Part shown: piece after piece, positions 945-64,000 of the stretch
How positions within the stretch are numbered: the stretch's first letter is position 1
Layout of the letters: each line of letters begins with the position of its first letter
Assembly (NCBI RefSeq): GCF_000150275.1
Contig: NW_002060945.1
Coordinates: 3,955,397 to 4,019,396, forward strand
Source of the DNA: Trichoplax adhaerens
Taxonomy: Eukaryota > Animalia > Placozoa
Reading direction: 5' to 3'
Length of the DNA: 64,000 nucleotides
Notes under the pieces: model-generated
What the model saw: only the letters and a program-made list of their open reading frames with translations
Databases searched by the model: none
Told to the model about the DNA's origin: nothing
Made by a program: the position numbers and the translations under genes

Positions 945-3740
945 GATGAATTAAGTGTTATTGTGAGAGCAGTTACGACTTTTTGTTTAAGTGTTTGATA
1001 TGTTGTCGTGTTAGGATTATTTAGTTGTTGATCGAAAGTACCGGCGAGTTTAAGACTACCGTTAAAGATATCTCCACGTTGACAATGAGTATCTGATTGA
1101 AGTCGTGTTTCAGATAATACACTATTAGAATAATATCCGATCTTACAGCTGCAATAGTAGTTATTATTATATATGAGACAGCTTGCTTTGGTATCGCAGT
1201 TATTATTTCCATAGCAGGTAACAATCGGAGTACAAGAGATACCATTTCCGTAATAGCCAGATTTACAACGACAACGGAATGATCCAAGAGTATTAATACA
1301 TTGAGCGTTAGTGTGACAGTTATCTAGATTATTTGAACATTCGTCTATATCTGTACAAGATATTAATCCGTTTCCAGAGAATCCAGTATTACATAGACAG
1401 TCGTACGATCCGTTCGTATTAACGCAGTTCGAGTTATTACTACACATGTTAACGTTATTAGTAATACATTCGTCGATATCTTGACAAGTGATGCCGTTAC
1501 CTTTGTAACCGTTATTACAAGTACACATATACGATCCAATAGTGTTATTACAGTTTGCGTAGATAGAACAGCTGTAAGTTTCTGTTGTACACTCGTTAAT
1601 ATCGTTGCAAGATATTCCGTTACCCGAAAATCCTATGTTGCATTGACAAGTATAAGATCCAATCGTGTTATTACAATAAGCGTGGATTGAACATCGATGT
1701 ACTTCTGATAGACATTCATCGACATCGTTACACGTTCTACCATCGCCTACATATCCGTTATTACATTGGCACGTATAAGATCCGACTGAATTAATACATT
1801 GAGCGTTAGTGTGACAGTTATCTAGATTATTTGAACATTCGTCTATATCTGTACAAGATATTAATCCGTTTCCAGAGAATCCAGTATTACATAGACAGTC
1901 GTACGATCCGTTTGTATTAACGCAGCTCGAGTTATTACTACACATGTTAAGGTTATTAGTAATACATTCATCGATATCTTGACAAGCGATGCCGTTACCT
2001 TTGTAACCGTTATTACAAGTACACATATACGATCCAATAGTGTTATTACAGTTTGCGTAGATAGAACAGTTGTAAGTTTCTGATATACACTCGTTAATAT
2101 CGTTGCAAGATATTCCGTTACCCGAAAATCCTATGTTGCATTGACAAATATAAGATCCAATCGTGTTATTACAATAAGCGTGGATTGAACATCGATGTAC
2201 TTCTGATAGACATTCATCGACATCGTTACACGCTTCTACCATCGCCTACGTATCCGTTATTACATTGGCACGTATAAGATCCGACTGAATTAATACATTG
2301 AGCGTTAGTGTGACAGTTATCTAGATTATTTGAACATTCGTCTATATCTGTACAAGATATTAATCCGTTTCCAGAGAATCCAGTATTACATAGACAGTCG
2401 TACGATCCGTTTGTATTAACGCAGTTCGAGTTATTACTACACATGTTAAGGTTATTAGTAATACATTCGTCGATATCTTGACAAGTGATGCCGTTACCTT
2501 TATAACCGTTATTACAAGTACACATATACGATCCAATAGTATTATTACAGTTTGCGTAGATAGAACAGCTGTAAGTTTCTGTTGTACACTCGTTAATATC
2601 GTTGCAAGATATTCCGTTACCCGAAAATCCTATGTTGCATTGACAAGTATAAGATCCGATCGTGTTATTACAATAAGCGTGGATTGAACATCGATCTACT
2701 TCTGATAGACATTCATCGACATCGTTACACGTTCTACCATCGCCTACATATCCGTTATTACATTGGCACGTATAAGATCCGGCTGTATTATTACAATTAG
2801 CGTTAGAATCGCATTGATTTGTTGTAGAGCATTCGTTGACGTCTTGGCATGTAAATCCGTTTCCAGAATAACCAGTACGACATATACAAGTATAAGACCC
2901 ATTATTGTTATAGCAATCGGCATTAACGGAACATGAATGAGTTCCTGATGAGCATTCGTTATTATCTGTACATGTAATTCCATCGCCTGTGTATCCTTGC
3001 GTACAATGACACGTGTATGAGCCGTTAGTANNNNNNNNNNNNNNNNNNNNNNNNNNNNNNNNNNNNNNNNNNNNNNNNNNNNNNNNNNNNNNNNNNNNNN
3101 NNNNNNNNNNNNNNNNNNNNNNNNNNNNNNNNNNNNNNNNNNNNNNNNNNNNNNNNNNNNNNNNNNNNNNNNNNNNNNNNNNNNNNNNNNNNNNNNNNNN
3201 NNNNNNNNNNNNNNNNNNNNNNNNNNNNNNNNNNNNNNNNNNNNNNNNNNNNNNNNNNNNNNNNNNNNNNNNNNNNNNNNNNNNNNNNNNNNNNNNNNNN
3301 NNNNNNNNNNNNNNNNNNNNNNNNNNNNNNNNNNNNNNNNNNNNNNNNNNNNNNNNNNNNNNNNNNNNNNNNNNNNNNNNNNNNNNNNNNNNNNNNNNNN
3401 NNNNNNNNNNNNNNNNNNNNNNNNNNNNNNNNNNNNNNNNNNNNNNNNNNNNNNNNNNNNNNNNNNNNNNNNNNNNNNNNNNNNNNNNNNNNNNNNNNNN
3501 NNNNNNNNNNNNNNNNNNNNNNNNNNNNNNNNNNNNNNNNNNNNNNNNNNNNNNNNNNNNNNNNNNNNNNNNNNNNNNNNNNNNNNNNNNNNNNNNNNNN
3601 NNNNNNNNNNNNNNNNNNNNNNNNNNNNNNNNNNNNNNNNNNNNNATATCTATGCAAGTTGTTCCATTACCCGTATAGCCTGTCTTACACTGGCAAGAGT
3701 ATACTCCAAGTGAATTGACACAATCTGCATGAGAATTATC
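945..3740 (-). CDS. Paralog A terminal-exon remnant: calcium-binding EGF repeats and start of SEA domain
   Basis: ORFs 866-2242 and 2226-2525 show repeated D(I/V)(D/N)EC EGF_CA motifs, then QSDTHCQRGDIFNGSLKL matching the SEA start of paralog D. +1 frameshift near 2233; gap 3031-3645. Confidence 0.85.
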
Positions 3741-6700
3741 GTGAAAATTTGAGTATAAGAAAGTATCCTAATAACGTATAAAGTATACATGACGGAACAA
3801 TTTTAATTTAATTAATCAAATAGTGTATTTATATTCACTAATAGATCCACACTAGTTATACTTGACGTATTGCTATTATTGTAATTTTCTTGATAATTGT
3901 TTAACATTATATTTAGTAGATATATTTGTAGAAATATTGTGATTGTTGTTAACGTGATGAAGGAAAGTATAAATGTAAAATTTCAGTAGACATTAGTTAG
4001 ACTATTCTGAACAGACCCACACGATAAGTTATACCAGCGTCTTCGGAATGGCAACAGGTATGAACCCCCAACTGCTATGGGGACAATCTGTTAGATAGAT
4101 TTCGCCGTCTCTACAGTGCAGGTTATCTAGCCATATAGGGCCAGTGCCGGAACCGTAAAGTATACTATGATTGGACGCTCATGAATTGAAATCTAATTGT
4201 CTACACTACATCGGCGTCAGTTATACTAAATGCATCGTCACATCCTGTGCCCCATATATATTATGATAGATTTCTATCCGTCCAGAGCTAACGGATTGAC
4301 CACCGACAAGGCGTATTTCATCTGTACAAACTTTTTATCAATTATTAAACAGAATTTGAGTATTCAACGAGTTATCTCACTATAAATTACAGCTATTTTT
4401 CCTGTGAAAGTTTGATTAAGACGTGCAATACACAGATATGGACACTGTTATCATATTGATTATTTAGGATGGTATAATTTCAAACCTTTAATTGGCGAAG
4501 CTAGGGTTCTATCTACTTCTCTAATTAAAACGAGCATGAAGAACTACACATATATCAAGAATTACAAATAAACTTCTCAGCTGCTGAGTATCAATCAATA
4601 CGATATTTGTGATGATACAGAGTGATCTATGACGTCAGTAATACTACGATTTCTTGTACTATTCTCAATAAGAGTATCAATTGAATCACAGCGACACTAT
4701 ATTTCGAATGTGATCATTTCGCACCGAATAGTATACGCTCACGTCAATATTATTCAATAAGTATGTATATTATCTACAGTAATGAATGAGAGCATAGCAG
4801 ACAGTTATTAACTTGCTGCTGTATTTAGAAGTCGATTCACCTGGAATAAAGAAATAATCTTATATTATATGTAAGAATAGCAGTTTACTGAAACCTTAAC
4901 TATGAATGCAAACAGAAATTTCTCAAATTTGCATTACTTTCTGAGTTATTAACTATTTACTGTAATTGCTCTATCAAAGTCGTGATGTACGATGTATTCT
5001 AGAGTTTAATGCGGTAAACATCATAAATACTATAATTCTGTCAATAGTAAAATGACAACGACTTTTTAGCTACGATACTTTGAGTGTACATACAAAATCG
5101 GTTAAATAAAGAATTTATAAGCTGGCTTTAAATAAGAAACTGTCTCCGTCGCCAAACTATATTTTTATACTTCGTAGTGTTGTAATAAATTGTTGTAGTT
5201 AATGTACTTGTCAGTGCTGGAAGCTTACTTGTGTTAAGTCAGGTCAGCTTACACATAATCTATTGTACAGTAACTACATCTAATCTTACACGATGCATGC
5301 AATATGTAATCAAAATTCTATTTAAAAGCTAGAATGCCTTGTGTTAAATATCTGATAGCTACTTAATCTTTTATCAATGCATCGAATCCTATATCACAAT
5401 TGTAAAACTTATTTGTATGAAATAATGTGATAAAAGGTTTAATCAGGTATTATCGTGTTCTGAAAGGAACTACAATATATATGGTGTGTTTATATAGTCT
5501 AGATACACATAGAAGCAGCTACTACTATCACTGGCTTACTACAACGTCCTGGTAACGCAGCGATATCATCAATAGCCATGTCGCCTTTCGGACTGCTACC
5601 TTGAACTCCTACAAATCTAATCTAGAGATTCGTGGCGACAAATTATTGCGTAGTAGTTTATATAATATTATAAGATATGGTGAGTATTCTTTTACTAATT
5701 CAAAAATAGTGAGTAGAGAGCTATCATATTTCGCTGTACCTTATGGATACCAGAAGGGATATTTAATTGAACCAGATACCAAACGTCTCCACTATTGCCA
5801 GAAGTATTATATATTCTTTTAGAAAGATCATCAACAATGAGAGGACCAATTGTTATTCCATTCCGGTTATACCAAAAAGAGAGGCAAAAGACGCTATCTG
5901 AATAGATTACAGGACTTTCAATGATAAATTTAGTTCCTTTAGGCATATCGGATGCTTCCGTATGAATGTAATAGCCTATAGACAGAGAAATAGTCACTAT
6001 AGCATTGTCTGTAAATGGTAAATGATTCGTTAATAATTGCCGTTTAATGCTAAAATTAGGTAGGAGATGCAGATATATCTCTTTGCTCTAATTTTTTGCA
6101 AGTATGCACACTCTAAATTAAATGAGACTATTGTAATTTCAATGTTTATGCAAAGTTAAATAGAAATTCAGAAGGCTTGACTACAGAGAAGGGGTTAGAG
6201 TAATTAACTTAATGTTAATGTACGAGTCTATGTCTTTGATCGAACTGCATGTACTGTATGTGTGTGTATAACCTGATATGTTTCCGTATGTATGATCGAA
6301 GCTTGGTCCAGTAAGCCAACTTGTGGTTTGGCCTCTACGCCTTGTCCACTGGAAGGTAGTTTCATTTGGATGTTTCCAGTTACAAAATCCAGACTCGAAA
6401 GTACAATTTAAACTATCGATACCGGCTGAAAATAATATAAAATTATAGTTCAAAGTAATTATTAGCAATTTAGTTATTGATAAGTTACTCTAGAAGATCG
6501 TAAAAATTGTATCTAGATATAGTCAGTATCTGTATTAAAATAAAATAGTCGAAAGCCTTATAAAAATTTATTGTAAGTATAACGATTAGACGCAATTATT
6601 TAGTACGTTCGTAGATCGTGATAATTGGAGATATACGTATAACAACGTAACTAGATTAAACATACCGTTACGACAAGTTACGCCTATATCTCCGGAATGA

Positions 6701-9700
6701 TTACAGTTATGAACGTTCCAACCGTTATGTGGACAATCCCTTAGATAGGTTTCGTTACCTCTGCAGCGTAGACCACTTAACCATATACGACTGGTACTAG
6801 AGCCGTAGTAGTTACTATAATTCGATGCTCCTGAATTGAAACCTAACTGTCTACACGCTACGTTGGCGTCAGTCATGTCAAATGCATAACCACATACTGT
6901 ACCCCATACATTATTATGATAGATTTTAATACGTCCAGAATTAAGAGATCGATCATCGACAAAACGTATTTCACCATCGAAAACTTGTATTGGTTTGTTA
7001 ACATAAAAATTCGAGTATAAGAAAATCATTCTCATTGTAAAACTACGTATACCGCTATACTTTTAATTAATTAATCAGTAGGTAAAATATTGTATTTATG
7101 TAACATGTATATATATTAGAATACGATTGATTACTGTTTAACCATAACGTAGTAGTGAATACACATGTATTGTGATTGTTATTAACGTAATATTAATCTA
7201 GGAAAGTGTAAATGTAAAATTAAAGTAGATATTAACTAGATTGAACATACCAAAACGGCAAGTTACGCTAATATCTTTATCATGGCCACAGTTATGAACT
7301 CCCCAGCCGTTGTGGCGACATTCTTTTAGATACATTTCGTTACCTTTGCAGTGTAGATTACTTAGCCATATAGGACCGGTGCTGCTAGAGCCGTGGTAGT
7401 TACCATAATTGGCTGCTCCTAAATTGAAATCTAACTGTCTGCAAACTACATTGGCGTCAGCCTTTTCGAAATAATCGCTACATACAGTGCCCCACATATT
7501 ATTATGATAGATTTCTAATCGTCCAGAATCAGCATATTGACCACCGACAAGGCGTATTGTACCTTCGCCAACTTGTAATCGATTAATGAAAAGAATTTGA
7601 GTATTAAACGAGTGTACTGCCGTTATACGACAAAAGGAAGCAAAGTCAATTTTTTCGAAAATTTGAGTTTATTAATTCTAATTACTTATTAGGGCGTAAT
7701 CTAACGGCAGACTAAATTTGATACTGTTCCTAGTATTCTCTGCCTATTTTTTTACTCAATTGGTATGACCCATTAAAACGGAATTTCTACCATTATATCG
7801 TACGCTAAATTCTACAAAGTTACTATACATCGCTGAGATGGCTATATTATACTAAAATTGCATACGATTTTATTAAGACGATTCTAACTACTGTATGGCA
7901 GCATGCACTTTGCCATGGACTTCTAGATCGCCTGGACGAGACACGAGTTACCGTGAATTACAGTACTTAAATAAGCGATAGCATTAGATTTTATATAGCA
8001 ATGAAGGTACTGTAGCATCTTCATCACTATAAAAGTGATGGCTTTAGAATTCTACTTTCTAGCAATTTACCATCGAAATATAATAATATTGCGATATATT
8101 GTTGAGATATTGACATATATATATATATTCTAACCTATAACGTATAATAAAATGTTCCGAATATTGTAGTAATTTGATAGTATAAAAAATTTAAGACATA
8201 TCTATTAAGTGATGCTGACAGACGCAAATTACTACACATCGTCAAATTTCATGCAAACTATTTAGAAGTTCTTGTAAGAGTCCATGATATAACTAGCACT
8301 TTACACCCGTAACTATCTCCCTTAGTAAAGTGTGTTTGTACTGCTGTATTTATTGATATTCACGAAAAAATTTCGTTTTGCCAGAGTAATTCAAGCCAAA
8401 TACTTATAGCGCTTATGTATCACAGGCCTAAAGTTCAAGCCCAGATATGCCTAGTTTATTGTTAGATAGTCTAGCCCTAAATACTGAACTGTATCCATAA
8501 ATACTCTGCTTTGCTCTGTTTAGGCAAAGAGGGGGAGGGGAGGGATTAGTATTGTAGCCAAAGATGTAGCAAGAATGCTGTCTAGAGTTCTAAGATATTC
8601 CCACTGTTTGAAATCAACCGACTAATTACTATTTTCGTGCAATATGTACACTTACCAAATTCACAGAAATCACCATTGTATCCTTGCGGGCATTGGCACA
8701 GGTAATGAGAACTGTTTCCAATACATGTTGCATAACTTGAGCAAGGGTTGGAATTGCAAGTATTATTACTTGACGACAAAACTATATAAGATAAAAACTA
8801 CGTAAAACGTCGGTCCATAATAGACGGTATTTTAAAATCTAAGACAGTTCTTTATAGGGTTTTTACAAATTAACTGATTGTCTATACAGATACGTTTAAA
8901 TATACTGTAATATACAATACTCGTACAGTGTATTGCATATTAGTAGTTAAACTATGCTGTATGCCTGTTTACGACATGTTAACGACTGGATTAGAAACTC
9001 ATAAGTAAAATCAACTATACTTTAGTATAAATTGCTGTCATTCACGGATAAGCTGAACACTGTAATTCTTACCTAATAGGACAAATTGTGATTCAGATAT
9101 GATGAGCTGAATTAAAATTAAGAGTAAGTTAGAAACAAATCATTACGATTTTATCGATCAAATTGACTCCGAAAAAGAATAAAATACGGCAATTTGATAT
9201 TTAACTTTAGCAAGTTTGCAATTAATTTGTTCATGAATTACGCGACACATAAATACAAATGAAAGCGTAAAAATTCTATGATTATCTCGCTAGAAATTCT
9301 TTTAGTTAGTTGAAATTAACCGGTAGGTAACGATTCACTACTTGTAAGTTCGTCATCTTTCTGTATAACATACATTAAGATTATTCGTCTGACTTGATTC
9401 TGGTTTAAAAATAGGCTATAAATTTACTAACGATAGCTACCGTACCGTATGTAAGTAACTATTCACACTCTTTTCATGCTTAGTCGTTAACATTGTATAA
9501 GAATTTTATATTGTAGTTAATACAGTAAAAGATTCAAGCGATATTTTATAAAATTACATAGTATTTGCTGTTAAAGAATTGCCATAGCTTTCACGATATT
9601 AATTTGATAATGGCTTAATGGCTTTATCAATCTCGTACGTGTATATGTACTAGTTGCTTAGATCATAGCACGTATAGTGTCTTTCATATTGTTTGTTCGA

Positions 9701-10989: not shown

Positions 10990-11197
10990 AGTGTAGATGG
11001 TTTTTGTCGACTTTAAAATGGTCAAAGAGCTTTAGAAATGGTATTAACCAATAAACTTCTAAACTCTATCGTGAAGAAGTGGGTATGCTACCATATTGTG
11101 CATGCACAGTGTATAAAATATGCAACCGTCAGCGTTCTTCTACTTCCAAATTTGTGCGAAAATGCCTGGCTACGCGGCCGCGGTTGTACATTTAGTA
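10990..11197. repeat. Diverged remnant related to the Helitron-like repeat at 46180-46744
   Basis: Shares gactttaaaa..g..a.aga.ctt, aataaacttctaaact, gtgcatgc..agtg and a GC-rich aatgc..ggctac...tagta end with 46370-46745 and 63748-63860. Confidence 0.5.
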
Positions 11198-23600: not shown

Positions 23601-23739
23601 CATCCTCCTTCCTCAGAAACAAAACATATTTATTTTTTATATCAATAAATTGTATTCACTGCACCTAAGCTTAACATTCAAAGGTCTTGTCTGACTGAAT
23701 ACATTCCGTGCCAGCCTATTAATTAATTATTAAATTACT

Positions 23740-24894: not shown

Positions 24895-24902
24895 ATTCTT
24901 TT

Positions 24903-24915
24903 ACTTCTGACACCA
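24903..24915 (-). promoter_or_regulatory. Primer-binding site (complementary to a tRNA-Leu 3' end)
   Basis: TGGTGTCAGAAGT immediately follows the 5' LTR; tRNA assignment is from recall of tRNA-Leu 3' ends (...ACTTCTGACACCA). Confidence 0.8.
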
Positions 24916-29240: not shown

Positions 29241-29404
29241 CCGGTAGGCACTAGTGTATTACTGATAACATTGATACATGATGGAACGTATTGGAAATAC
29301 CAGGTAAGCATATTACAGTACAGTGTACTGTATGGTACTCGCAGGAAATTTCAACTTATTTCTCACTTGCAATCAATCGTATTTTACTAAGATAATCTAT
29401 GGAC

Positions 29405-29575
29405 AATCTACAGCATCTTTAATTGCTTGTGCACATATAAATTATGTAAATGGGTCAGATAATTGCAGTATCTTTAATTGTATGCGCACAGTACGGTAAA
29501 TTATGTAAACTAGTCATATAAATAGGTAAGATAAGCTACAGCATCTTTAATTGCATACGGACACGTAAATGGGCA
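29405..29575. repeat. Three degenerate ~55-70-bp tandem repeats
   Basis: Core cag(c/t)atctttaattg...gtaaa at ~29411, ~29466 and ~29539. Confidence 0.6.
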
Positions 29576-53000: not shown

Positions 53001-56000
53001 CAACGTTCGTTAAAGTAGCTGTTATAATAAATATTGTCAGCTATGATATTGCTTATACTCCGAAAATATTTTAATAACATACAGCTATACATCTACACAA
53101 TAGATCAAAGCACACATGAATCACATTCTACTTACTCATTTGGCATTGCTGTCCGGTCCAACCATACGAACAACTGCAATTATATCCGCCAGTAGAGTTA
53201 CTAGTACATGTCCCATGAACACATGGATATGATGCACAACTTCCAGCTGAAATTAATTTTAAATATTCAAATTTAGCCATAGACTAGTCTTTAGTAAATT
53301 TAGACAGAGAATACATCCCGATACAGCTCTCAAATGCGCGTAGTATTATTCAATACAGAACCGGCATATACTGTATCTTGGGATAGTAATATCTTCAGTA
53401 ACAGAAACAACATTACATCGCGGTTTTCAATATAAGAACATTATATTACAGTATTTATCGTATATTATTTATTAGTAAATTCGTAAGTTGCCATTGTCCT
53501 GTATTTACTTAATGAATTAATTAACTGTATTGTAGAAACATCTCACATTCACTCAATGCTGATAAAATCGTAAAGTCGGCCGTGATTACGCAGGCGTAAT
53601 CTATACAACAACGTAATACAAATACATCAAGAATTGGAATCTAAGTTCAAGAAATATTTGAAGCTGTAATTATAAATTGTAACTTATAATATCGATATCT
53701 CTTAAGAGTATGTAAGCATAGAAATATTTAGAGTTGGTTAATTAACCGACTTATAAAATCATCATATAGTAAACAGACGATCCTAAGAAGATTTCGTAAC
53801 CGTCTCTATATGATGTTCGATATTGGCTCACTTCATTAAGACGTAATCGTTCACAATTATCTATTCGTATACAGTATAATGCACTGTCTATTTAATTACC
53901 GAAATAACGTAAAAAGCTTTCGATTTATTCCACCTTGCAACGTAACTTAGTATACAATCACTGTCATTGTCGATTAATTTTCCATTCAATTTGATGTAAA
54001 CACAAAAAAATTTGTGTAGATCTACTAATTATTCAATTAGACGTGACTATTCATAAAAATGTTGTGTTCTTATTTGAACATTAATACTGTAACATAAAAA
54101 GGAGTTCCTAATAGGAAGTGAAGAAAATAGTAAAACTATTTTTTAATTTACTTTTGCGTAAAACTTACTTAAACAAGTAACTCCTGCGTAATTGTAATTA
54201 TTGCAAGATCCAGTATCAGTCCAATTGGATCGAGAACACTGCAATAAAGAGGTTTCGTTTCCTGTACATCCCAGATATCTTAGCCATATCTGAATGCGTG
54301 CAGAACCATATTGTGAGCAACATTGGTATGTAGATACATTTGCAAATCCTAATTGCCTGCAGGCTACTTGAGCATCCTGCATACTCCAGCCATGATCGCA
54401 AATTGCACCCCAACGACCGTCATGATATATTTGTACATTGCCTCTCGTAGAATCGTAACCTTTTCCAACAAGTCTAAGCGCTCCCTCTGCTACGGGACCT
54501 ATGAAATAATGATATGTAAATTATTGCAAAAAGAATAAATTACCTGATGAACAATATCACATTTACAAAGATAATCCTTAACACCTTAAACTAACGATTT
54601 GAATATAGAAGAGATAATTAAGCTGTCTCACCTTCAGCACAGTTTGATCCATAATACCCTTCTGGACATTTGCACGTGTAAGCTTGAAACTGATCAACAC
54701 ACGTAGCATTACTTGAACACGGATTAGAAGCACATTCGTTAGTCCCTGAAAGGAGTTAAAATTAATAATAATGAGATTATAATAGGTATAGCCTCGGACA
54801 TATCTTATTTTAACCATGGCGAAAATAATACCGATTCTTAACTAAAATGACAGTATCGTTAAATCAATAACTATAAAATAAACTCTATCTGAAGATCTCC
54901 AAGTAATTATTCATAGTATCAATCTCACAATAATGTTATTAACGTATATAAAAGAAATATCATCGCCAATCATAAAGTTACCAGCTTCACACTGTTTGCC
55001 AGTCCACCCTGGCGAGCAACTACAATTATAACCAACTCCCAAAGTTGCGTTACTGATGCAAGTTCCATGAACGCAAGGGAAGGATCCGCATGCGCCAACT
55101 GTGAACAAAATTTATTTTTAATGCAGTTCTAAGAGCATGCCAACGGGTAAAAAAACAAGAAGTCAAATTCTTTTACTAAAATTTACATACCAGTACATTC
55201 AATGCCGGCTTCGTCGTAACGTTGACAACCAGTGTTATTCCATCCAGTGTATGAGCATGCAGATAGACTACTTTCAGAGCCAGTACAGTTAACATTACTT
55301 AGCCATATTGGGCCATTTCCATATCCAAAATATGAACAGCAATAATAGGATGATACATTAGTGTAACCTAGCTGTCTGCATACGACTCTAGCATCCTCAA
55401 TTCCAAATTCTCGATGGCATACAGATCCCCACTGATTGTTATAAAATACTTCCAATCTTCCAGCATTTGGCTTATATCCATTTACTAGTCGTATAGGTAT
55501 AGTGATGTTTGTACCTTTGTTTGAAGCAACATTGTAAGATATTGAGTATCAGCTTGCCGATAAAAATACTTTAAGTCTATGTCGCTACATATAATTAAAG
55601 AAATTAAAATACGATAATAACATACAGCATAAGATTCAGGCTAACCATATAATTATAGATCTAATCGTGCTACCAATATAATCAAGTAAAGAACAAATCT
55701 ATCAAATGTCAAAACTGAATAACTTGATTCTAATGTGCTATCTATTACATACAATTTTGACTATTAAACTATATCAACATGATTTAGGAAATTAAGCTGC
55801 AGTTGCAGTTATGTAAAATGTATGTGCAAATGTATTTTTAATAGAAAAAAATAATTACAAAACGTAATAAAACGAAATAAAAACTATTCTAATCTCCCGA
55901 AAGTAATACTTGTCTATAATTCATCAGATAAGGTATAGTACTTAGCATATCTTAATACAATTAGCTACTCTCAAAACCTGAGGTTAGGAAACTATAACTT

Positions 56001-59000
56001 CGTAAATGATTATAATGTTTTTGATACATAACGTAAAACATGCATCTAGGGGCCTATTTAACTAACTTGACCTCACATATCAACTTATAAATCAATAATT
56101 TGATGCAAATTACCTTAAAATGAAAGCTTAATTATTTTTAAATAAATACGAATCGATAAATTTTCGAATTTAGTTGAAGTTTGAAATTTCTTATAAAATT
56201 TAAACTTGAATAGTGTTCTCTAGTCTGCACATCGTCTATTTTAATACTATAGATTACAAAAAAAGCATCATACTTACTCAGTCTACATGATGAATTAATG
56301 TAACTGTAGCCAGACGGACACTGGCAATCGTATCTACCAATTCTGTCGATACAAGTAGCGTGCTTCCACATGGTGATGAATNNNNNNNNNNNNNNNNNNN
56401 NNNNNNNNNNNNNNNNNNNNNNNNNNNNNNNCATAACACTAAAGTGTATAATACACATAAAATATCTTTTATAATAATGTAATCAATACAACTGCTATAA
56501 TTATCTATAATTAACATTATTGCAGATTTTTCAAGGAAAATCGTCAGAATAATAGTTTATATAAAGCATAGAATAATACGATGTTGAAGTAAGAAACTGA
56601 CGATCTCGTATTGTAATTTCAGTATGAAGTAATCATACAGTTACGCATATGTGTTGTATTATATAGTAAAAATATTGTCTATACTCTATAATAGACGATA
56701 TTAATCCACTATTCGTACATTAATATTATTATTCTGCTGTACGTCGTCTACCTGATTGACATTCATTCCCGGTGTATCCATTTATACAAGAGCAGTTATA
56801 ACCGATTCCTGAAGAGCCTACCATGCAGGTACCACCATTTAAGCATGGATTTGAGTAACAATCGCTTCCTAATTTTAGATGTTTTGATATATTTGTTTAT
56901 AAAATATAATATTGAAAGTTACTTATTACATATTATTTAATAAATTCGTGTGCTAGTAGTATTTATGTTATAGTACATTAATTTTAATAATAAAACAATT
57001 TAGTACAGTACATGTAGAACCATACTTACGGATATTACAGTTTGTTCCCACATAGCCCGGCGAACAAGAACAGTTATATGCACCGGGTTGATCGTAACAT
57101 GTTCCGTTAACACAAGGATTAGATGCGCATTGATTAAAGTCTATTTCAAGTAAAATGGTAATTAGAGTCTATTAAACATGATACACAAACAATTCTTGTA
57201 CATTGTGTAGTTATATAGAATATCTACATTATCATGTAAATTAAAAATACTGTTCGTTAGTGTCTTAGTAATACTAAAAACTCTATACTTGTATATAACA
57301 GGCGTTTAATATCTGACGGAACTTAGTAATATAGTAAATACCATAATAATGCTAATGGAATCTTTGAATTTGATAGAATTTCTGACAGTTAAACTACTGT
57401 GTATTTCTGTAGTACTGTCGTACTTTGTAGCTACAATACAAGTAACTATTGTAATTTTATCATTACTTAAACAATCTCTAGTATCTAACTACCAAATTTA
57501 ACAATGACGTCTAATATCTACAGAACGTAGATAGTACAATATTCTACAAGAATGAACTCTTTACCTATATAAATATGTAATATAACTTACCAGTACATCT
57601 TACACCTGCCACATCGTATCTAGAACATCCATTACTGATACTTCCCCATCCAGAGCCGCGAGAGCAATCTGAAACTCTACTTTCATTTCCTCTACAATAT
57701 AGATTGCTTAACCACATTAACGTGTAATACTTGTTATTTCCATAGTACGAGCAACAGTAAGAGTGCGAGGCGTTAGGATAACCTAACTGACGACATACAA
57801 CTTGTGCATCGTTTATATCAAAGGAACGGTGACATATCGAGCCCCAGGTTCCGTTATGATAGATTTCGACATTGCCTTCATTCGGTCCAGCAGCGTTATA
57901 CTGAGCCACTAATCTAACGCTACCATCAGCAATTGGTCCTATTACGTTGTATTAACGTTAAAAATTGTTATACAAAATCATATAAGAATGGGTGTTTTCG
58001 AACTCGTAATCACTTATAATTAAATTAAAATATCTAATAGTAGAATTAGAATTTACTGCTAGCGCTATTATATCCTAATAGCAACCTTCTTGACAGTTCG
58101 ATCCATAGTATCCATCTGGACATAAACATACATAACTAGTATGTTGATCAATACATGTTGCATTGGCTGAACAAGGGTTAGAAGCGCATTCATTTACACC
58201 TAGACGATGTTATCAATTACAAAAATAATTACTATTACATAGAATACTTTTTACAACGCCCTCGCATTTCCTGGAAAACGGTATTATCTATTTTATAGTA
58301 TAGTATTATATCTGTATTCTCAACGTTCGTTAAAGTAGCTGTTATAATAAATATTGTCAGCTATGATATTGCTTATACTCNNNNNNNNNNNNNNNNNNNN
58401 NNNNNNNNNNNNNNNNNNNNNNNNNNNNNNNNNNNNNNNNNNNNNNNNNNNNNNNNNNNNNNNNNNNNNNNNNNNNNNNNNNNNNNNNNNNNNNNNNNNN
58501 NNNNNNNNNNNNNNNNNNNNNNNNNNNNNNNNNNNNNNNNNNNNNNNNNNNNNNNNNNNNNNNNNNNNNNNNNNNNNNNNNNNNNNNNNNNNNNNNNNNN
58601 NNNNNNNNNNNNNNNNNNNNNNNNNNNNNNNNNNNNNNNNNNNNNNNNNNNNNNNNNNNNNNNNNNNNNNNNNNNNNNNNNNNNNNNNNNNNNNNNNNNN
58701 NNNNNNNNNNNNNNNNNNNNNNNNNNNNNNNNNNNNNNNNNNNNNNNNNNNNNNNNNNNNNNNNNNNNNNNNNNNNNNNNNNNNNNNNNNNNNNNNNNNN
58801 NNNNNNNNNNNNNNNNNNNNNNNNNNNNNNNNNNNNNNNNNNNNNNNNNNNNNNNNNNNNNNNNNNNNNNNNNNNNNNNNNNNNNNNNNNNNNNNNNNNN
58901 NNNNNNNNNNNNNNNNNNNNNNNNNNNNNNNNNNNGATCATCCCGATACAGCTCTCAAATGCGCGTAGTATTATTCAATACAGAACCGGCATATACTGTA

Positions 59001-62000
59001 TCTTGGGATAGTAATATCTTCAGTAACAGAAACAACATTACATCGCGGTTTTCAATATAAGAACATTATATTACAGTATTTATCGTATATTATTTATTAG
59101 TAAATTCGTAAGTTGCCATTGTCCTGTATTTACTTAATGAATTAATTAACTGTATTGTAGAAACATCTCACATTCACTCAATGCTGATAAAATCGTAAAG
59201 TCGGCCGTGATTACGCAGGCGTAATCTATACAACAACGTAATACAAATACATCAAGAATTGGAATCTAAGTTCAAGAAATATTTGAAGCTGTAATTATAA
59301 ATTGTAACTTATAATATCGATATCTCTTAAGAGTATGTAAGCATAGAAATATTTAGAGTTGGTTAATTAACCGACTTATAAAATCATCATATAGTAAACA
59401 GACGATCCTAAGAAGATTTCGTAACCGTCTCTATATGATGTTCAATATTGGCTCACTTCATTAAGACGTAATCGTTCACAATTATCTATTCGTATACAGT
59501 ATAATGCACTGTCTATTTAATTACCGAAATAACGTAAAAAGCTTTCGATTTATTCCACCTTGCAACGTAACTTAGTATACAATCACTGTCATTGTCGATT
59601 AATTTTCCATTCAATTTGATGTAAACACAAAAAAATTTGTGTAGATCTACTAATTATTCAATTAGACGTGACTATTCATAAAAATGTTGTGTTCTTATTT
59701 GAACATTAATACTGTAACATAAAAAGGAGTTCCTAATAGGAAGTGAAGAAAATAGTAAAACTATTTTTTAATTTACTTTTGCGTAAAACTTACTTAAACA
59801 AGTAACTCCTGCGTAATTGTAATTATTGCAAGATCCAGTATCAGTCCAATTGGATCGAGAACACTGCAATAAAGAGGTTTCGTTTCCTGTACATCCCAGA
59901 TATCTTAGCCATATCTGAATGCGTGCAGAACCATATTGTGAGCAACATTGGTATGTAGATACATTTGCAAATCCTAATTGCCTGCAGGCTACTTGAGCAT
60001 CCTGCATACTCCAGCCATGATCGCAAATTGCACCCCAACGACCGTCATGATATATTTGTACATTGCCTCTCGTAGAATCGTAACCTTTTCCAACAAGTCT
60101 AAGCGCTCCCTCTGCTACGGGACCTATGAAATAATGATATGTAAATTATTGCAAAAAGAATAAATTACCTGATGAACAATATCACATTTACAAAGATAAT
60201 CCTTAACACCTTAAACTAACGATTTGAATATAGAAGAGATAATTAAGCTGTCTCACCTTCAGCACAGTTTGATCCATAATACCCTTCTGGACATTTGCAC
60301 GTGTAAGCTTGAAACTGATCAACACACGTAGCATTACTTGAACACGGATTAGAAGCACATTCGTTAGTCCCTGAAAGGAGTTAAAATTAATAATAATGAG
60401 ATTATAATAGGTATAGCCTCGGACATATCTTATTTTAACCATGGCGAAAATAATACCGATTCTTAACTAAAATGACAGTATCGTTAAATCAATAACTATA
60501 AAATAAACTCTATCTGAAGATCTCCAAGTAATTATTCATAGTATCAATCTCACAATAATGTTATTAACGTATATAAAAGAAATATCATCGCCAATCATAA
60601 AGTTACCAGCTTCACACTGTTTGCCAGTCCACCCTGGCGAGCAACTACAATTATAACCAACTCCCAAAGTTGCGTTACTGATGCAAGTTCCATGAACGCA
60701 AGGGAAGGATCCGCATGCGCCAACTGTGAACAAAATTTATTTTTAATGCAGTTCTAAGAGCATGCCAACGGGTAAAAAAACAAGAAGTCAAATTCTTTTA
60801 CTAAAATTTACATACCAGTACATTCAATGCCGGCTTCGTCGTAACGTTGACAACCAGTGTTATTCCATCCAGTGTATGAGCATGCAGATAGACTACTTTC
60901 AGAGCCAGTACAGTTAACATTACTTAGCCATATTGGGCCATTTCCATATCCAAAATATGAACAGCAATAATAGGATGATACATTAGTGTAACCTAGCTGT
61001 CTGCATACGACTCTAGCATCCTCAATTCCAAATTCTCGATGGCATACAGATCCCCACTGATTGTTATAAAATACTTCCAATCTTCCAGCATTTGGCTTAT
61101 ATCCATTTACTAGTCGTATAGGTATAGTGATGTTTGTACCTTTGTTTGAAGCAACATTGTAAGATATTGAGTATCAGCTTGCCGATAAAAATACTTTAAG
61201 TCTATGTCGCTACATATAATTAAAGAAATTAAAATACGATAATAACATACAGCATAAGATTCAGGCTAACCATATAATTATAGATCTAATCGTGCTACCA
61301 ATATAATCAAGTAAAGAACAAATCTATCAAATGTCAAAACTGAATAACTTGATTCTAATGTGCTATCTATTACATACAATTTTGACTATTAAACTATATC
61401 AACATGATTTAGGAAATTAAGCTGCAGTTGCAGTTATGTAAAATGTATGTGCAAATGTATTTTTAATAGAAAAAAATAATTACAAAACGTAATAAAACGA
61501 AATAAAAACTATTCTAATCTCCCGAAAGTAATACTTGTCTATAATTCATCAGATAAGGTATAGTACTTAGCATATCTTAATACAATTAGCTACTCTCAAA
61601 ACCTGAGGTTAGGAAACTATAACTTCGTAAATGATTATAATGTTTTTGATACATAACGTAAAACATGCATCTAGGGGCCTATTTAACTAACTTGACCTCA
61701 CATATCAACTTATAAATCAATAATTTGATGCAAATTACCTTAAAATGAAAGCTTAATTATTTTCAAATAAATACGAATCGATAAATTTTCGAATTTAGTT
61801 GAAGTTTGAAATTTCTTATAAAATTTAAACTTGAATAGTGTTCTCTAGTCTGCATATCGTCTATTTTAATACAATAGATTACAAAAAAAGCATCATACTT
61901 ACTCAGTCTACATGATGAATTAATGTAACTGTAGCCAGACGGACACTGGCAATCGTATCTACCAATTCTGTCGATACAAGTAGCGTTGCTTCCACATGGT

Positions 62001-64000
62001 GATGAATTACATTCATTGATATCTATTTAATAGAAGTACGCGCATATCTAATTAATATTTACTGTATACTAATTAATCTCAAGGCTAATAATCTATTACA
62101 ATCTAAAACTTTAATAAAGAACTACTGTACTGTTACTACTGTATGTATTAATAATGGCTACTTGTAAACTAACTAACTAACATCGTACATTCCATTTATA
62201 CTTTAAATTGATAACAGTAAAGAAGTTCATAAATTAATTCTAAACTACTATTACTTGTGTAATTGATATTGCTTACTTGTTTGACACCTATTGCCAGTAA
62301 ATCCATAAGAACACGAACAACTATATCCATGAATTCCAGCAAAACAAGTAGCACCATTTGAACACGGATTCGGTAAACAACTATTACTAGCATCTAAATA
62401 TAGCATAAATTAATATTAGTATACGAGTATAAATAAGATACAAAACATAGTTTTACGCGTATTCAGCTTAGCACGTAAATTTGGATAATTATTTAATGTT
62501 ATTATGAAAAAAGTTTTACTGACTTTGTTGGCAATACGAATTATTGTAGATGTAGCCTGGTGGACAATAACAATCGTATCTACCGATACCATCAATGCAG
62601 GTAGAATTGTTCAAGCATGGAGAGGAACTACATTCATTAACATCTGTTATAGAATAAATCAAATAAAATCAATCCATACATTCTTTTCTATTATTTAAAA
62701 CTCATAAAAGCTAAGATATCAATCTATTTCAAAGCTATGAAATCATGCACGACTACAGCATAATGAAAGTAAAATAATGTGGCTATGAGTGAAGTATGTT
62801 GTAATTGTAGTAGTTATTACTTACTTATCTGACAAATATTGCCAGTAAATCCATGAGGACATGAACAATTATATCCACTCTGGGTTCCTTGTGAGCAAGT
62901 ACCGCCATTTAAGCAAGGACTTGGCGAGCAACTATTGTTTAAAGCTGTAATATTTAACAGTTATTGACAATCACAATTAGTAATACAAATTATATAGAGG
63001 TAAAATCAAATTGCTATGACAAACTATGTGTAATAGAATTCTGTTTTGTTATGTGTTCTGTCCTATCTTACAATCGTTGCTAAGAAAGATATACCAAAGT
63101 ACAATCGTACAGTACAGTGTATGAAGTAGTTATAGTTTGGTGATACTGTATCACACATACAGTATAGCCATAGACGTATTTTACGAACTTACACCCGAGA
63201 CCACTAAAAGGAAAGAAAGAGGGACGTAAAGCGGCTACCAGTGAAAATTAACATGGAGGTCTATCATTCTTTAGGCCATTCTGCTATAGCTATGCCACTA
63301 GCTCATGTACAACCATCTAGTGGGCTTACTGTAGTACTTATGTCTGATTTCTAAGTATGAAAATAGACAGTACGTACACACTACGGTATACTAGACTGTT
63401 AGCTCAGCTATTATAGTCTAATACTGTACGCTAGACCACCTACCCCAGGCAACATTAACCAGTTCAATTAAAGACAGAGAAAAGAACGCACTAAGCACTT
63501 CTTCTTATTGCGTCTTATTAACTTAATAGTAATTATATTTATATTACTAGGGTAAGCTCGGTGCTGCAAGGTACGTTTCGTATATGGTAACGGAAAGTAA
63601 CTTTCCTGAAGAAACCAATTTTTGATAACTTTATTCCGCGATTGACGACAACTTTAACGTATTCGATCGATCACGGCCAAACGGAGAGTGGGACTGAAAA
63701 CTATTGCACACCTGCACAATCTGCATACAGTGTAGATGCTCCTCGTTGACTTTAAAACGGCGAGAGAACTTGAATAAACTTCTAAACTACTCAACTCTAT
63801 ACTGCAGTGAAGCACTGTCACCTGTCGTTGCTATTTTGTTTGTGCATGCTCAGTGCCTGATATTGCTTAAATATACTAAATTTTTATGTTCAGTTATTTG
63901 TGATATGCATGCAGTCAATGCAGGTAATGGACAATTGGACATTAGATATTAAACGTTTTGTGAGAAAAAGTAAAGCACATTACTTTAAAATTTGGGGGGA
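32613..64000 (-). CDS. Paralog D: giant type-I membrane protein (SRCR-EGF2-5)n-Ser/Thr mucin-cbEGF3-NIDO-AMOP-VWD-EGF19-SEA-EGF3-TM; 5' end beyond the window
   Basis: More than 40 GT-AG exons. All single-domain exons checked are multiples of 3 nt and phase 1-1. No stops seen; the only indel is a 1-bp loss next to the gap at ~56360. Stop codon at 32613. Confidence 0.88.
38229..39250 (-). CDS. D exons: NIDO N-terminal exon 38229-38356; cbEGF exons 38439-38561, 38928-39050, 39128-39250
   Basis: LYPFG...DD...SPVFF...KLY|VSMNG; three 123-nt DxNEC exons. The NIDO exon is 128 nt, as in paralog B. Confidence 0.9.
39357..40190 (-). CDS. Ser/Thr-rich mucin-like exon of D (834 nt)
   Basis: Ser/Thr-dominated 278 codons; AG acceptor at 40191-40192 and GT donor at 39355-39356; phase 1-1. 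Confidence 0.85.
39590..39890 (-). repeat. 78-bp (26-aa) coding minisatellite, ~4 copies
   Basis: gataaatc(a/g)ctggaagttcg at 39599, 39677, 39755 and 39833; unit [26 protein letters not shown]. Confidence 0.9.
40323..45577 (-). CDS. D exons: SRCR 40323-40658, 41917-42240, 43535-43867; EGF 41285-41398, 41512-41622, 42688-42801, 43053-43166, 44194-44307, 44536-44655, 44910-45026, 45157-45276, 45458-45577
   Basis: Domain motifs with GT-AG boundaries; lengths 111-120 nt (EGF) and 324-336 nt (SRCR). Confidence 0.9.
46180..46744. mobile_element. Intronic non-autonomous Helitron-like/MITE-like repeat bounded by CTAG at both ends
   Basis: Left attaCTAGggtaagctcggtgc-tgcaag-gtacg; right gcacgg-ctaca-cctgc tttcgtgaCTAGtaat. 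Second copy starts at 63547; relative at ~11000. No coding capacity evident. Confidence 0.5.
47161..51820 (-). CDS. D exons: SRCR 47161-47505, 48637-48969, 50420-50743; EGF 47689-47802, 48059-48169, 49270-49383, 49656-49772, 50925-51038, 51432-51548, 51710-51820
   Basis: Domain motifs and phase-1 GT-AG boundaries. Confidence 0.9.
52271..56381 (-). CDS. D exons: SRCR 52271-52618, 54169-54498, 55191-55514; EGF 52766-52879, 53136-53246, 54632-54745, 54982-55098, 56278-gap
   Basis: Domain motifs and phase-1 GT-AG boundaries. Confidence 0.9.
56432..62005. repeat. Near-identical second copy of 51112-56381 (SRCR 57591-57938, 59794-60123, 60816-61139 plus EGF exons)
   Basis: Identical ORF translations at offsets +5320 and +5625 (the difference is due to gap 58381-58935); only scattered single-base differences. 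Confidence 0.92.
61790..64000. repeat. Near-identical copy of 44425-46625 (4 EGF exons 61903-62022, 62277-62393, 62524-62643, 62825-62944, plus the Helitron-like repeat from 63547)
   Basis: Offset +17367; ORFs 44829/62196 and 45137/62504 are identical; indels accumulate inside the repeat element. Confidence 0.92.

What the first reader, a model, noticed from the sequence alone, without database searches (positions are those of the whole stretch)
945..64000. Tandem cluster of modular SRCR-mucin receptors: variable exon-cassette head on a conserved NIDO-AMOP-VWD-EGF-SEA-TM body
Seen: four same-strand paralogs share all or part of the same C-terminal body but have different heads (A: EGF-SRCR2-MAM; B: SRCR2-EGF2-MAM-SRCR2; D: at least 9 SRCR interleaved with EGFs plus a mucin exon; C: head lost). 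Only D is clearly intact. Known: SRCR arrays (DMBT1-type) are pattern-recognition modules, and NIDO-AMOP-VWD defines MUC4/Mesh-type surface proteins. Inference: a birth-and-death, exon-shuffling family of epithelial or mucosal recognition proteins combining DMBT1-like, MUC4-like and MUC1-like modules. I do not recognise this full architecture as a characterised family.
Basis: partly seen in the sequence, partly recalled or inferred. Interest (0 to 1): 0.85.

Follow-up and report, generated by a model that had tools for sequence, protein, structure and literature searches.

The report
Placozoan SRCR-headed mucin-4-like gene cluster
This stretch of the Trichoplax genome holds a cluster of membrane-mucin genes, one of them intact and transcribed, in which a long array of SRCR (scavenger-receptor) modules is spliced onto a MUC4-like stalk; it is real and strikingly modular, but it is a lineage-specific variant of a known protein family, not a new kind.

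Summary
All genes lie on the minus strand. Gene D ends in one 5.4-kb exon encoding NIDO, an AMOP-like region, VWD (GDPH), C8-3_MUC4, an Ig-like domain, many calcium-binding EGFs, SEA (G/SII), three EGFs, a membrane span and a 68-residue tail. RNA contigs from three studies join three SRCR exons, EGF exons and a Ser/Thr-rich exon to this body through 13 GT-AG introns. A DNA-like run shows none of the 12 tabulated joints. All head cassettes are phase 1-1 exons.

Gene B carries frameshifts and a stop. C is a fragment. A has a head plus a doubtful body contig.

Corrections:
- D runs past the window to about 74.4 kb.
- It has 18 SRCR exons as assembled, probably 15, because 51112-56381 and 56432-62007 look like an unmerged contig overlap at a gap.
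- AMOP is below Pfam's threshold.

The genome is Trichoplax. NCBI already names the H2 orthologue "Mucin-like protein, partial". A 2025 paper mentions a Trichoplax mucin-4-like protein with VWD, SRCR and EGF in dorsal epithelium. Cnidarian mucin-4-like proteins also combine variable heads with a C-terminal SEA. Mussel and sponge models carry SRCR arrays on the same body, apparently gained independently.

Verdict: a new variant of a known kind, of moderate interest. The same scan noted this family on other DNA of this genome.

The parts
32616..38057 (-). Gene D terminal exon: rest of NIDO, AMOP-like Cys region, VWD, C8-3_MUC4, Ig-like domain, EGF array, SEA, 3 EGF, TM, 68-aa tail, stop
   Evidence: Open frame and Pfam hits. 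Acceptor at 38057 from RNA joint 38055|38227. 100% identity to the Trichoplax sp. H2 model P0001 over residues 1-800.
36990..37001 (-). GDPH motif at the start of the VWD domain (body residue 359). This is where MUC4-type acid-catalysed autocleavage occurs.
   Evidence: Motif search. VWD boundaries. Cleavage itself is inferred, not shown.
33378..33389 (-). SEA domain G/SII motif (body residue 1563), the MUC1-type autoproteolysis site
   Evidence: Conserved in B and in the downstream body E, changed in TRIADDRAFT_54443, and truncated in C.
32820..32894 (-). Transmembrane span followed by a basic stop-transfer stretch and a 68-aa cytoplasmic tail
   Evidence: Kyte-Doolittle window above 2 at residues 1727-1738.
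38229..38356 (-). Exon holding the start of NIDO (128 nt; converts phase 1 to phase 0)
   Evidence: RNA joints in three studies. GT-AG verified.
38439..39250 (-). Three 123-nt calcium-binding EGF exons (38439-38561, 38928-39050, 39128-39250)
   Evidence: RNA joints, exon lengths, ORF content.
39357..40190 (-). Ser/Thr-rich mucin-like exon (834 nt; 36% Ser, 15% Thr; about five 26-aa tandem repeats)
   Evidence: internal repeat 39596-39957. Both ends are joined to neighbouring exons in RNA. Its length differs from the H2 orthologue.
40323..44307 (-). RNA-supported proximal head: SRCR 40323-40658, EGF 41285-41398, EGF 41512-41622, SRCR 41917-42240, EGF 42688-42801, EGF 43053-43166, SRCR 43535-43867, and an EGF exon from 44194
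   Evidence: Joints in runs X4, X6 and X12 but not in the DNA-like run X1. The loose end at 43869 maps to 44196. Pfam SRCR hits.
44366..64000 (-). Distal head of D, predicted only: repeating SRCR-EGF-EGF exon triplets that continue outside the window to about 73159. A candidate signal-peptide ATG lies at 74387.
   Evidence: ORF and Pfam scans. No RNA was laid here.
51112..56381 (-). Block Q (3 SRCR exons plus EGF exons), 99.9% identical to block Q' at 56432-62007
   Evidence: Self-BLAST. The alignment begins at the first base after gap 56382-56431 and ends at the last base before it, the signature of an unmerged contig overlap.
56432..62007 (-). Block Q', a probable assembly duplicate of Q. 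It contains gap 58381-58935, which hides the equivalent of EGF exon 53131-53283.
26364..29188 (-). Gene C relic: VWD fragment, EGFs in overlapping shifted frames, and a SEA that stops at its cleavage motif. It has no NIDO, TM or head.
   Evidence: tblastn with the D body, Pfam, translation.
19349..25459 (-). Gene B head: SRCR, SRCR, EGF, EGF, degenerate MAM, SRCR (split), SRCR
   Evidence: Pfam, MAM-start alignment, models P0011 and P0007.
23743..24900 (-). Fragment of an LTR-retroelement integrase (Integrase_H2C2 and rve) lying between B's first two SRCR exons
   Evidence: Pfam.
12611..17828 (-). Gene B body, NIDO to TM, broken by at least five frame changes relative to D and by an in-frame TAA at 14768-14770
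   Evidence: tblastn frames -3/-2/-1/-2/-3/-2 with overlapping coordinates. ORF list. '1 TAA' reported.
5502..8797 (-). Gene A head: EGF, SRCR, SRCR, MAM
   Evidence: Pfam. H2 model P0007 residues 2025-2437.
945..3030 (-). EGF array with 498-bp tandem repeats and the start of a SEA domain (944-1135), on a small contig bounded by gaps. It is attributed to A but may be misplaced.
   Evidence: Pfam, SEA hit, end-to-end 97.6-98% identity to an array at -19859..-15593.

Best explanation
The window is Trichoplax DNA. It carries part of a lineage-specific, tandemly expanded family of type I transmembrane mucin-4-like glycoproteins.

The one clearly working gene here, D, is transcribed. It is built from a long run of interchangeable phase 1-1 exons (group-B SRCR, EGF, a Ser/Thr-rich mucin exon). 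These are spliced onto a single large exon encoding the conserved stalk: NIDO, AMOP-like region, VWD with GDPH, C8-3, Ig-like domain, calcium-binding EGF rod, SEA with G/SII, EGFs, TM and a short tail.

Shown here:
- the domains;
- the splicing of three SRCR exons and the mucin exon to the body;
- the exon phases;
- the paralogues and their breaks.

Inferred:
- The protein sits on the apical surface of an epithelium as a glycocalyx component.
- Its SRCR array binds microbial or particulate ligands, as DMBT1 does.
- It self-cleaves at GDPH and G/SII into non-covalently held subunits, so the ligand-binding head can be shed under force.

Heads vary between paralogues by cassette duplication and loss (1, 4, 11 and 15-18 SRCRs). 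Neighbouring copies B, C and perhaps A are decaying.
For: - Domains.
- Splicing: 12 tabulated joints, all CT..AC on the plus strand, in contigs from three independent studies (X4, X6, X12) and none in the DNA-like run X1. A 13th joint comes from a loose end.
- Exon phase: all head exons are 111-123, 324-336 or 834 nt, multiples of three.
- Gene model: the Trichoplax sp. H2 model RDD39041.1 uses the same exons.
- Motifs: GDPH, G/SII, TM.
- SRCR type: 8 Cys and one exon per domain, i.e. group B.
- Family: placozoan bodies form one clade with 100/100 support next to non-SRCR paralogues, and the genome has many loci.
- Nearest Atlas clusters are 'mucin-4'.
- Literature: dorsal epithelial expression of a VWD+SRCR+EGF mucin-4-like gene, proposed as a glycocalyx component (PMC12013895).
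- Variable heads in gene models of paralogues elsewhere in Trichoplax.
Against: - No RNA was laid on 44.4-74 kb, so the distal 12-15 SRCR exons are joined to D only by strand, phase, spacing and the absence of any other body upstream.
- The H2 model is 'partial' and starts at 44305.
- AMOP is below Pfam's threshold.
- It is unknown which paralogue the 2025 paper saw.
- Ligand binding, cleavage and shedding are untested.
- Cytoplasmic tails are not conserved between paralogues, so no signalling role can be argued.
- Several repeats abut assembly gaps.
Confidence: 0.75

Rival explanations
1. The distal SRCR/EGF array (about 44.4-74.4 kb) is a separate, secreted DMBT1-like gene. On this reading gene D has only the three proximal SRCRs.
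For: RNA contigs were laid only up to 43900, and they end one exon further on. The H2 model starts at 44305 and is flagged partial. Trichoplax has many stand-alone SRCR/EGF 'DMBT1' models.
Against: The contigs break exactly where the 98% repeat P/P' begins (44400), as short-read assemblies do. The H2 model has no start codon or signal peptide at 44305. All upstream exons share strand, cassette size and the SRCR-EGF-EGF rhythm. No stop-bearing terminal or TM exon, and no other NIDO/SEA body, was found within 60 kb upstream. The only signal-peptide-like start found lies at 74387.
Confidence: 0.15
2. The 99.9% identical blocks at 51112-56381 and 56432-62007 are a real, very recent tandem duplication. 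Gap 56382-56431 hides a further copy of block P, so D truly has 18 or more SRCRs.
For: The region has genuine older duplications at 87% and 98% identity with the same unit structure. The flanks of the gap would fit a P-Q-P-Q-P array.
Against: Identity begins at the first base after the gap and ends at the last base before it. That is expected for two overlapping contigs that were not merged and not for a biological duplication. The second copy is itself made of two short contigs. At 99.9%, the identity is far closer than the 98% of the neighbouring P/P' pair.
Confidence: 0.2
3. The proteins are structural or adhesive components (cell-cell junction, extracellular matrix or substrate adhesion, like Drosophila Mesh, SUSD2 or the coral skeletal 'mucin-like protein') and not microbe-recognition molecules. 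On this reading the SRCR and EGF arrays act as spacers or homophilic binders.
For: NIDO-AMOP-VWD proteins include junctional and matrix proteins (established knowledge). The nearest named invertebrate relatives are 'Mucin-like protein' of corals. A long calcium-binding EGF rod is typical of matrix proteins such as fibrillin. No binding data exist.
Against: Rapid turnover, copy-number change and pseudogenes are more typical of environment-facing recognition genes. A Ser/Thr-rich domain plus a SEA module is the hallmark of apical membrane mucins. A family member is reported in dorsal epithelial cells together with intelectins (PMC12013895).
Confidence: 0.25

Closest known systems
Vertebrate MUC4 (sialomucin complex)
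   Same: NIDO, AMOP-position region, VWD beginning with GDPH, C8-3_MUC4, EGFs, a single TM, a short tail and a Ser/Thr-rich domain N-terminal to NIDO. Cat MUC4 is a significant hit to the body (E 3e-77), and the nearest Atlas clusters are 'mucin-4'.
   Different: MUC4 has no SRCR, no SEA and only 2-3 EGFs. Here there are 15-18 SRCRs, many EGFs and a SEA-EGF module next to the membrane. The mucin domain here is short (277 aa) and poor in Pro.
Cnidarian mucin4-like proteins and coral 'mucin-like protein' (PMC9080433)
   Same: NIDO-AMOP-VWD body with variable extra N-terminal domains and, in some, a C-terminal SEA before the TM. The Acropora 'Mucin-like protein' is a hit to the body.
   Different: The reported cnidarian heads are CUB, ZP and FN3, not SRCR arrays. 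No tandem cluster with cassette turnover is described.
DMBT1 / gp340 / salivary agglutinin and invertebrate 'DMBT1-like' SRCR arrays
   Same: Tandem group-B SRCR domains (8 Cys, one exon each) separated by short spacers. Copy number varies through cassette duplication. They are the best-scoring relatives of the head.
   Different: DMBT1 is secreted and ends in CUB-ZP. Here the spacers are EGF pairs, and the array is anchored by a MUC4-like stalk and a TM.
SEA-type membrane mucins (MUC1, MUC3/12/13/17)
   Same: Juxtamembrane SEA with a G/S-hydrophobic cleavage motif, flanked by EGFs as in MUC3/12/17, then a TM and a short tail.
   Different: Those mucins lack NIDO, VWD and SRCR and have far longer PTS repeats.
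Mytilus edulis model P0072 and Amphimedon queenslandica model P0084
   Same: 18 SRCRs, then NIDO, VWD, C8-3 and EGF in the mussel. 23 SRCRs, then AMOP, VWD and C8-3 in the sponge. The order is the same as here.
   Different: Neither gave a Pfam SEA hit. These are predicted models only. The mussel body groups with a mollusc FN3-headed protein, not with the placozoan bodies, so its SRCR head looks independently acquired. The sponge row sat on a long branch and its position in the tree is unresolved.

Membership tests
MUC4-type (NIDO-AMOP-VWD) membrane glycoproteins | NIDO domain | tested here: met
   PF06119, 79.6 bits in D and 46.1 bits in B.
MUC4-type (NIDO-AMOP-VWD) membrane glycoproteins | AMOP domain between NIDO and VWD | tested here: inconclusive
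   PF03782 scores 19.4 bits against a cut-off of 25 and covers only profile positions 3-49. The Cys-rich region does align in register with the AMOP of P0026. Cat MUC4 itself gives no Pfam AMOP hit.
MUC4-type (NIDO-AMOP-VWD) membrane glycoproteins | VWD domain with GDPH autocleavage motif, followed by C8-3_MUC4 | tested here: met
   PF00094 at 49.5 bits and PF23263 at 28.4 bits. GDPH at residue 359. Cleavage itself was not tested.
MUC4-type (NIDO-AMOP-VWD) membrane glycoproteins | EGF domains, a single C-terminal TM and a Ser/Thr-rich domain N-terminal to NIDO | tested here: met
   The mucin exon is spliced upstream of NIDO.
SEA-module membrane mucins (MUC1/3/12/13/17 type) | Juxtamembrane SEA domain with a G/S[VI][VI] cleavage motif | tested here: met
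   PF01390 at 39-42 bits. GSII at residue 1563. Autoproteolysis was not tested.
SEA-module membrane mucins (MUC1/3/12/13/17 type) | Long, dominant Pro/Thr/Ser tandem-repeat domain | tested here: not met
   There is only one 277-aa Ser/Thr-rich exon, Pro is not among its eight commonest residues, and it has about five 26-aa repeats.
Group-B SRCR superfamily (DMBT1-like arrays) | SRCR domains with 8 cysteines, each encoded by one exon | tested here: met
   17 of D's 18 SRCR exons show 8 Cys; the 18th is cut by the gap at 67784-67833. Single-exon status is shown by RNA for three of them.
DMBT1 proper | C-terminal CUB and zona pellucida domains; a secreted protein | tested here: not met
   No CUB or ZP hit in any exon or body scanned. 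A TM is present.
Mesh / SUSD2 | Sushi (CCP) domain after VWD | tested here: not met
   No PF00084 hit in the D body.

The most novel reading that the evidence does not exclude
Placozoans have turned the ancient SEA-bearing MUC4 stalk into a rapidly diversifying family of sheddable surface receptors. SRCR-array length and composition are tuned by exon-cassette duplication, as a germline-encoded, variable microbe-sensing or microbiome-managing glycocalyx. Molluscs, and possibly sponges, arrived at the same SRCR-on-MUC4 design independently.
Probability: 0.25. Interest if true: 0.6.

Novelty: new variant of a known kind. Interest (0 to 1): 0.4.

Why it matters
The locus gives an RNA-backed example, in one of the simplest animals, of how large surface glycoproteins are assembled from phase-compatible exon cassettes on a conserved, self-cleaving stalk.

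It supports the idea that the ancestral MUC4-type protein carried a SEA module. It also shows that SRCR arrays were attached to this stalk more than once in animal evolution.

Practically:
- It corrects gene models. D is unannotated or partial, and the H2 'Fibrillin-2' model is chimeric.
- It flags probable false duplications in the reference assembly.
- It points to a candidate component of the placozoan dorsal glycocalyx that could be tested for bacterial binding.

Tried and rejected
- The distal head, gene B and read depth over the 99.9% blocks could therefore not be tested.
- Paper searches for NIDO+AMOP+SRCR, for NIDO+AMOP+Trichoplax, and for TRIADDRAFT_54443, TRIADDRAFT_54448, B3RS17 or RDD39041 found nothing.
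- The supplements of PMC12013895 and PMC6321704 did not name the gene or list NIDO, VWD or SEA. I could not tell which paralogue is the published 'mucin 4-like' gene.
- Pfam gave no MAM hit for B's MAM exons. Only a local alignment to A's MAM start supports it.
- The ORF at 680-865 looked integrase-like by eye but had no Pfam hit.
- I considered that B's frame changes could be small introns. I rejected this because the adjoining HSPs overlap in coordinates.
- I did not send any joined (spliced) protein of my own to a search tool. Exons were searched by reference and the public model P0001 was used instead.

Full report
**Identity of the DNA**

The window is G000:C1412:3955397-4019396, on a 9.66-Mb scaffold of a 105.6-Mb, 1414-contig assembly. 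Earlier notes of this scan name the genome as Trichoplax. I checked this. The large ORF is 100% identical over 800 residues to an NCBI protein of Trichoplax sp. H2. Two T. adhaerens models (TRIADDRAFT_54443 and TRIADDRAFT_54448) map to this same scaffold at 95-100% identity. GC content is 31-39% outside the gaps. All the genes discussed here are on the minus strand.

**Gaps first**

N runs lie at 895-944, 3031-3645, 56382-56431 and 58381-58935. A further 1338 N lie immediately before the window.

Self-BLAST shows that 51112-53060 matches 56432-58380 (99.95%) and 53314-56381 matches 58939-62007 (99.84%). The identity starts at the first base after gap 56382-56431 and ends at the last base before it. 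That is the pattern of two contigs whose 5.3-kb overlap was not merged. I rate a false duplication at about 0.75-0.8.

Gap 58381-58935 corresponds to 53061-53313 in the other copy. That stretch holds the EGF exon 53131-53283.

The contig between gaps 895-944 and 3031-3645 is, from its first base to its last, 97.6-98% identical to an EGF array 16-20 kb downstream of the window. It may therefore be a misplaced or allelic contig. Continuity or reading frame across any of these gaps cannot be established with the data at hand.

**Gene D, the body**

One open frame, 32616-38075 (1820 codons), gives these Pfam hits:
- NIDO (79.6 bits)
- VWD (49.5 bits)
- C8-3_MUC4 (28.4 bits)
- a weak Ig-like match (He_PIG / Big_9)
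- a long run of calcium-binding EGFs (at least 17 EGF_CA stretches)
- SEA (39-42 bits)
- three more EGFs

Between NIDO and VWD lies a cysteine-rich stretch of about 130 residues. It scores 19.4 bits on AMOP against a cut-off of 25. It aligns in register with the AMOP of a protein that does pass the cut-off. Cat MUC4 itself fails the same Pfam model. I therefore call AMOP 'position and pattern conserved, membership inconclusive'.

GDPH opens the VWD domain at residue 359. The SEA domain has G/SII at residue 1563. A 25-residue hydrophobic span at 1728-1752 is followed by basic residues and a 68-residue tail.

**Gene D, the head, and the key test**

I laid contigs of four public runs on 38000-43900.

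Three runs from three studies show the same 12 joints, every one CT..AC on the plus strand, i.e. GT..AG on the minus strand. One of these runs is on record as RNA. The other two hold about half of the words, as expected for exons only. A fourth run holds 97% of the words, covers the introns evenly, and shows none of the joints. It behaves as genomic DNA.

A loose end at 43869 maps to 44196 and gives a 13th intron, 43868-44193.

The resulting exons are:

| Exon | Content | Length (nt) |
|---|---|---|
| 43535-43867 | SRCR | 333 |
| 43053-43166 | EGF | 114 |
| 42688-42801 | EGF | 114 |
| 41917-42240 | SRCR | 324 |
| 41512-41622 | EGF | 111 |
| 41285-41398 | EGF | 114 |
| 40323-40658 | SRCR | 336 |
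| 39357-40190 | Ser/Thr-rich | 834 |
| 39128-39250 | calcium-binding EGF | 123 |
| 38928-39050 | calcium-binding EGF | 123 |
| 38439-38561 | calcium-binding EGF | 123 |
| 38229-38356 | NIDO start | 128 |
| 38057 down to the stop at 32616 | terminal exon | about 5440 |

Every head cassette is a multiple of three and lies in phase 1-1. Only the NIDO-start exon changes phase. The contigs break inside the repetitive part of the mucin exon (39637-39791), but both sides lie in one open exon. The H2 model RDD39041.1 uses exactly these exons. The SRCR head, the mucin exon and the MUC4-like body are therefore one transcript.

**The distal head**

Upstream of 44.3 kb the same rhythm of SRCR-EGF-EGF exons continues. 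It runs out of the window to an EGF exon at 73004-73159.

As assembled there are 18 SRCR exons. All readable ones have 8 Cys, which makes them group B. The count falls to 15 if the 99.9% block is collapsed.

A 7-kb block at 44400-51558 recurs at 61766-68836 at about 98% identity, and older copies are about 87% identical.

No NIDO or SEA body lies within 60 kb upstream. The array therefore has no other stalk to belong to. I could not lay RNA on it, so its attachment to D remains inference. I give the two-gene rival 0.15.

**The other copies**

*Gene B.* The head is SRCR, SRCR, EGF, EGF, a degenerate MAM start, then a split SRCR and another SRCR. A fragment of a retroelement integrase sits between the first two SRCR exons. 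The body aligns to D's over NIDO to C8-3 in frames -3, -2, -1, -2, -3, -2 with overlapping coordinates, and it has an in-frame TAA at 14768-14770. In this assembly it is a pseudogene. The JGI model TRIADDRAFT_54448 steps around the breaks.

*Gene C.* It retains an 86-codon VWD fragment, EGFs in shifting frames, and a SEA that ends at the cleavage motif.

*Gene A.* It has a clean EGF-SRCR-SRCR-MAM head. No NIDO or VWD was found for it. Its EGF and SEA-start 'body' sits on the doubtful contig.

*Outside the window.* The cluster continues downstream. An EGF-SEA-EGF-TM body lies at -15099..-20616. TRIADDRAFT_54443 lies at -26603..-31764, with a body in one continuous tblastn match (97.9% to its own JGI model); its head has a single SRCR. 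Between them lie 1-kb inverted repeats enclosing inverted fragments of family genes (compare note s1-775968).

*Genome-wide.* The NIDO-to-C8-3 query finds four near-full-length copies and many exon-wise or broken ones on at least ten scaffolds and small contigs. The H2 'Fibrillin-2' model RDD39051.1 fuses B's body to A's head. Its residues 392-855 best match unplaced H1 contigs that carry stops. That model is chimeric.

**Comparison with other animals**

The body finds 'mucin-like protein' or mucin-4 relatives in corals, echinoderms, molluscs and cat. The nearest Atlas clusters are 'mucin-4'.

SEA co-occurs with NIDO (and, in the metagenome proteins, VWD) in an Acanthaster model and in two JGI metagenome proteins of unknown origin. 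PMC9080433 reports it in sea-anemone mucin4-like proteins, which also carry variable N-terminal CUB, ZP or FN3 domains.

Searching with the head finds DMBT1-like arrays everywhere. It also finds a Mytilus model with 18 SRCRs followed by NIDO-VWD-C8-3-EGF, and an Amphimedon model with 23 SRCRs followed by AMOP-VWD-C8-3.

A maximum-likelihood tree of the body region, rooted at the midpoint for drawing only, groups sequences by phylum:
- placozoans, 100/100, with non-SRCR paralogues as sister;
- the Mytilus SRCR protein with an FN3-headed oyster protein, 100/98, inside a mollusc clade, 98/95.

The simplest reading is that SRCR arrays were recruited to this stalk independently. Deep branches are long and poorly supported, the Amphimedon row is on one of those long branches, and the non-placozoan proteins are unverified gene models.

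Within Trichoplax, family gene models carry 1, 4 or 11 (plus 3 MAM) SRCRs, against 15-18 exons counted for D.

**Literature**

- Kamm et al. 2019 (PMC6321704) count 45 SRCR transmembrane proteins in Trichoplax sp. H2 with phylum-restricted domain combinations. They do not mention NIDO, VWD or SEA.
- Mayorova et al. [quoted passage not shown] They suggest it belongs to the apical glycocalyx. No gene identifier is given in the text held.
- No paper held describes the cluster, the cassette structure or the pseudogenes.

**How it probably works**

Shown: the architecture, the splicing, the exon phases, and the paralogue variation and decay.

From established knowledge of the families:
- GDPH in VWD domains and G/S-hydrophobic motifs in SEA domains undergo autocatalytic cleavage.
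- SEA-cleaved mucins stay associated and can separate under force.
- Group-B SRCR arrays such as DMBT1 bind bacteria and polyanions.

Inferred: D is an apical type I membrane glycoprotein. A stiff calcium-binding EGF rod and a glycosylated spacer hold an SRCR array away from the cell. The array binds microbial or particulate ligands, and the head can be released at either cleavage site.

The cytoplasmic tails are unrelated between paralogues, so I propose no signalling function. A structural or adhesive role is the main functional rival (0.25).

**Verdict**

This is a lineage-specific variant of the MUC4-like membrane-mucin family. It is already present in automated annotation and has been mentioned in passing in the literature. 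The added value here is the RNA-verified cassette structure, the cluster anatomy and the assembly cautions. The scan has noted the same family on other DNA of this genome (s1-790366, s1-790333).

Noticed in passing
window 23743-24900 (-): Fragment of an LTR-retroelement integrase (Integrase_H2C2 and rve core) in broken frames, inserted between the first two SRCR exons of gene B.
   Followed up: partly
window 1292-2806: A 498-bp (166-codon, about four EGF domains) tandem repeat, three copies at about 97% identity, inside the EGF array. The same repeat occurs several times at -19512..-15817 downstream of the window.
   Followed up: partly
outside the window, at window coordinates -14833..-13809 and -3328..-2305: 1-kb inverted repeats (98.5% identical) bracket about 11 kb that holds inverted, diverged fragments of B's body and A's head (79-95% identical). 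This looks like an inverted segmental duplication of family DNA as much as a transposon (compare note s1-775968).
   Followed up: partly
H2 protein P0007 (RDD39051.1, 'Fibrillin-2'), mapped to window 21593-5502: The model fuses gene B (through its TM region) to gene A's head. Its residues 392-855 match unplaced H1 contigs C1095, C910 and C1147 (86-95%, two of them with stops) better than the window's B (68-71%). It is a chimeric gene model.
   Followed up: partly
G000 contig C1328:3752-7691: A small unplaced contig carries the same VWD fragment as relic C, followed within 1.3 kb by an EGF-SEA-TM body 97% identical to H2's B. This is a different arrangement from the window (another copy or haplotype).
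   Followed up: no
window 41049 and 43220 (introns of D): In all three RNA-type runs, low-depth unspliced contigs run off into the same foreign sequences at these two points. Neither sequence occurs within 60 kb either side. The two share a short common core, so this may be a polymorphic repeat insertion in the sequenced strains.
   Followed up: partly
window 39357-40190: The Ser/Thr-rich exon differs in length between this genome and the H2 orthologue (450 aligned codons against 405 residues, 87% identity). Flanking exons are 97-100% identical. This is VNTR-like behaviour.
   Followed up: partly
window 11017-11412 (+): A 132-codon plus-strand ORF with 7 Cys lies between genes A and B. It was not examined.
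   Followed up: no
window 32616-44307 (gene D): Among the proteins retrieved, no T. adhaerens (H1) gene model covers gene D. Only the H2 partial model does. The length filter of the search may hide shorter H1 models.
   Followed up: partly
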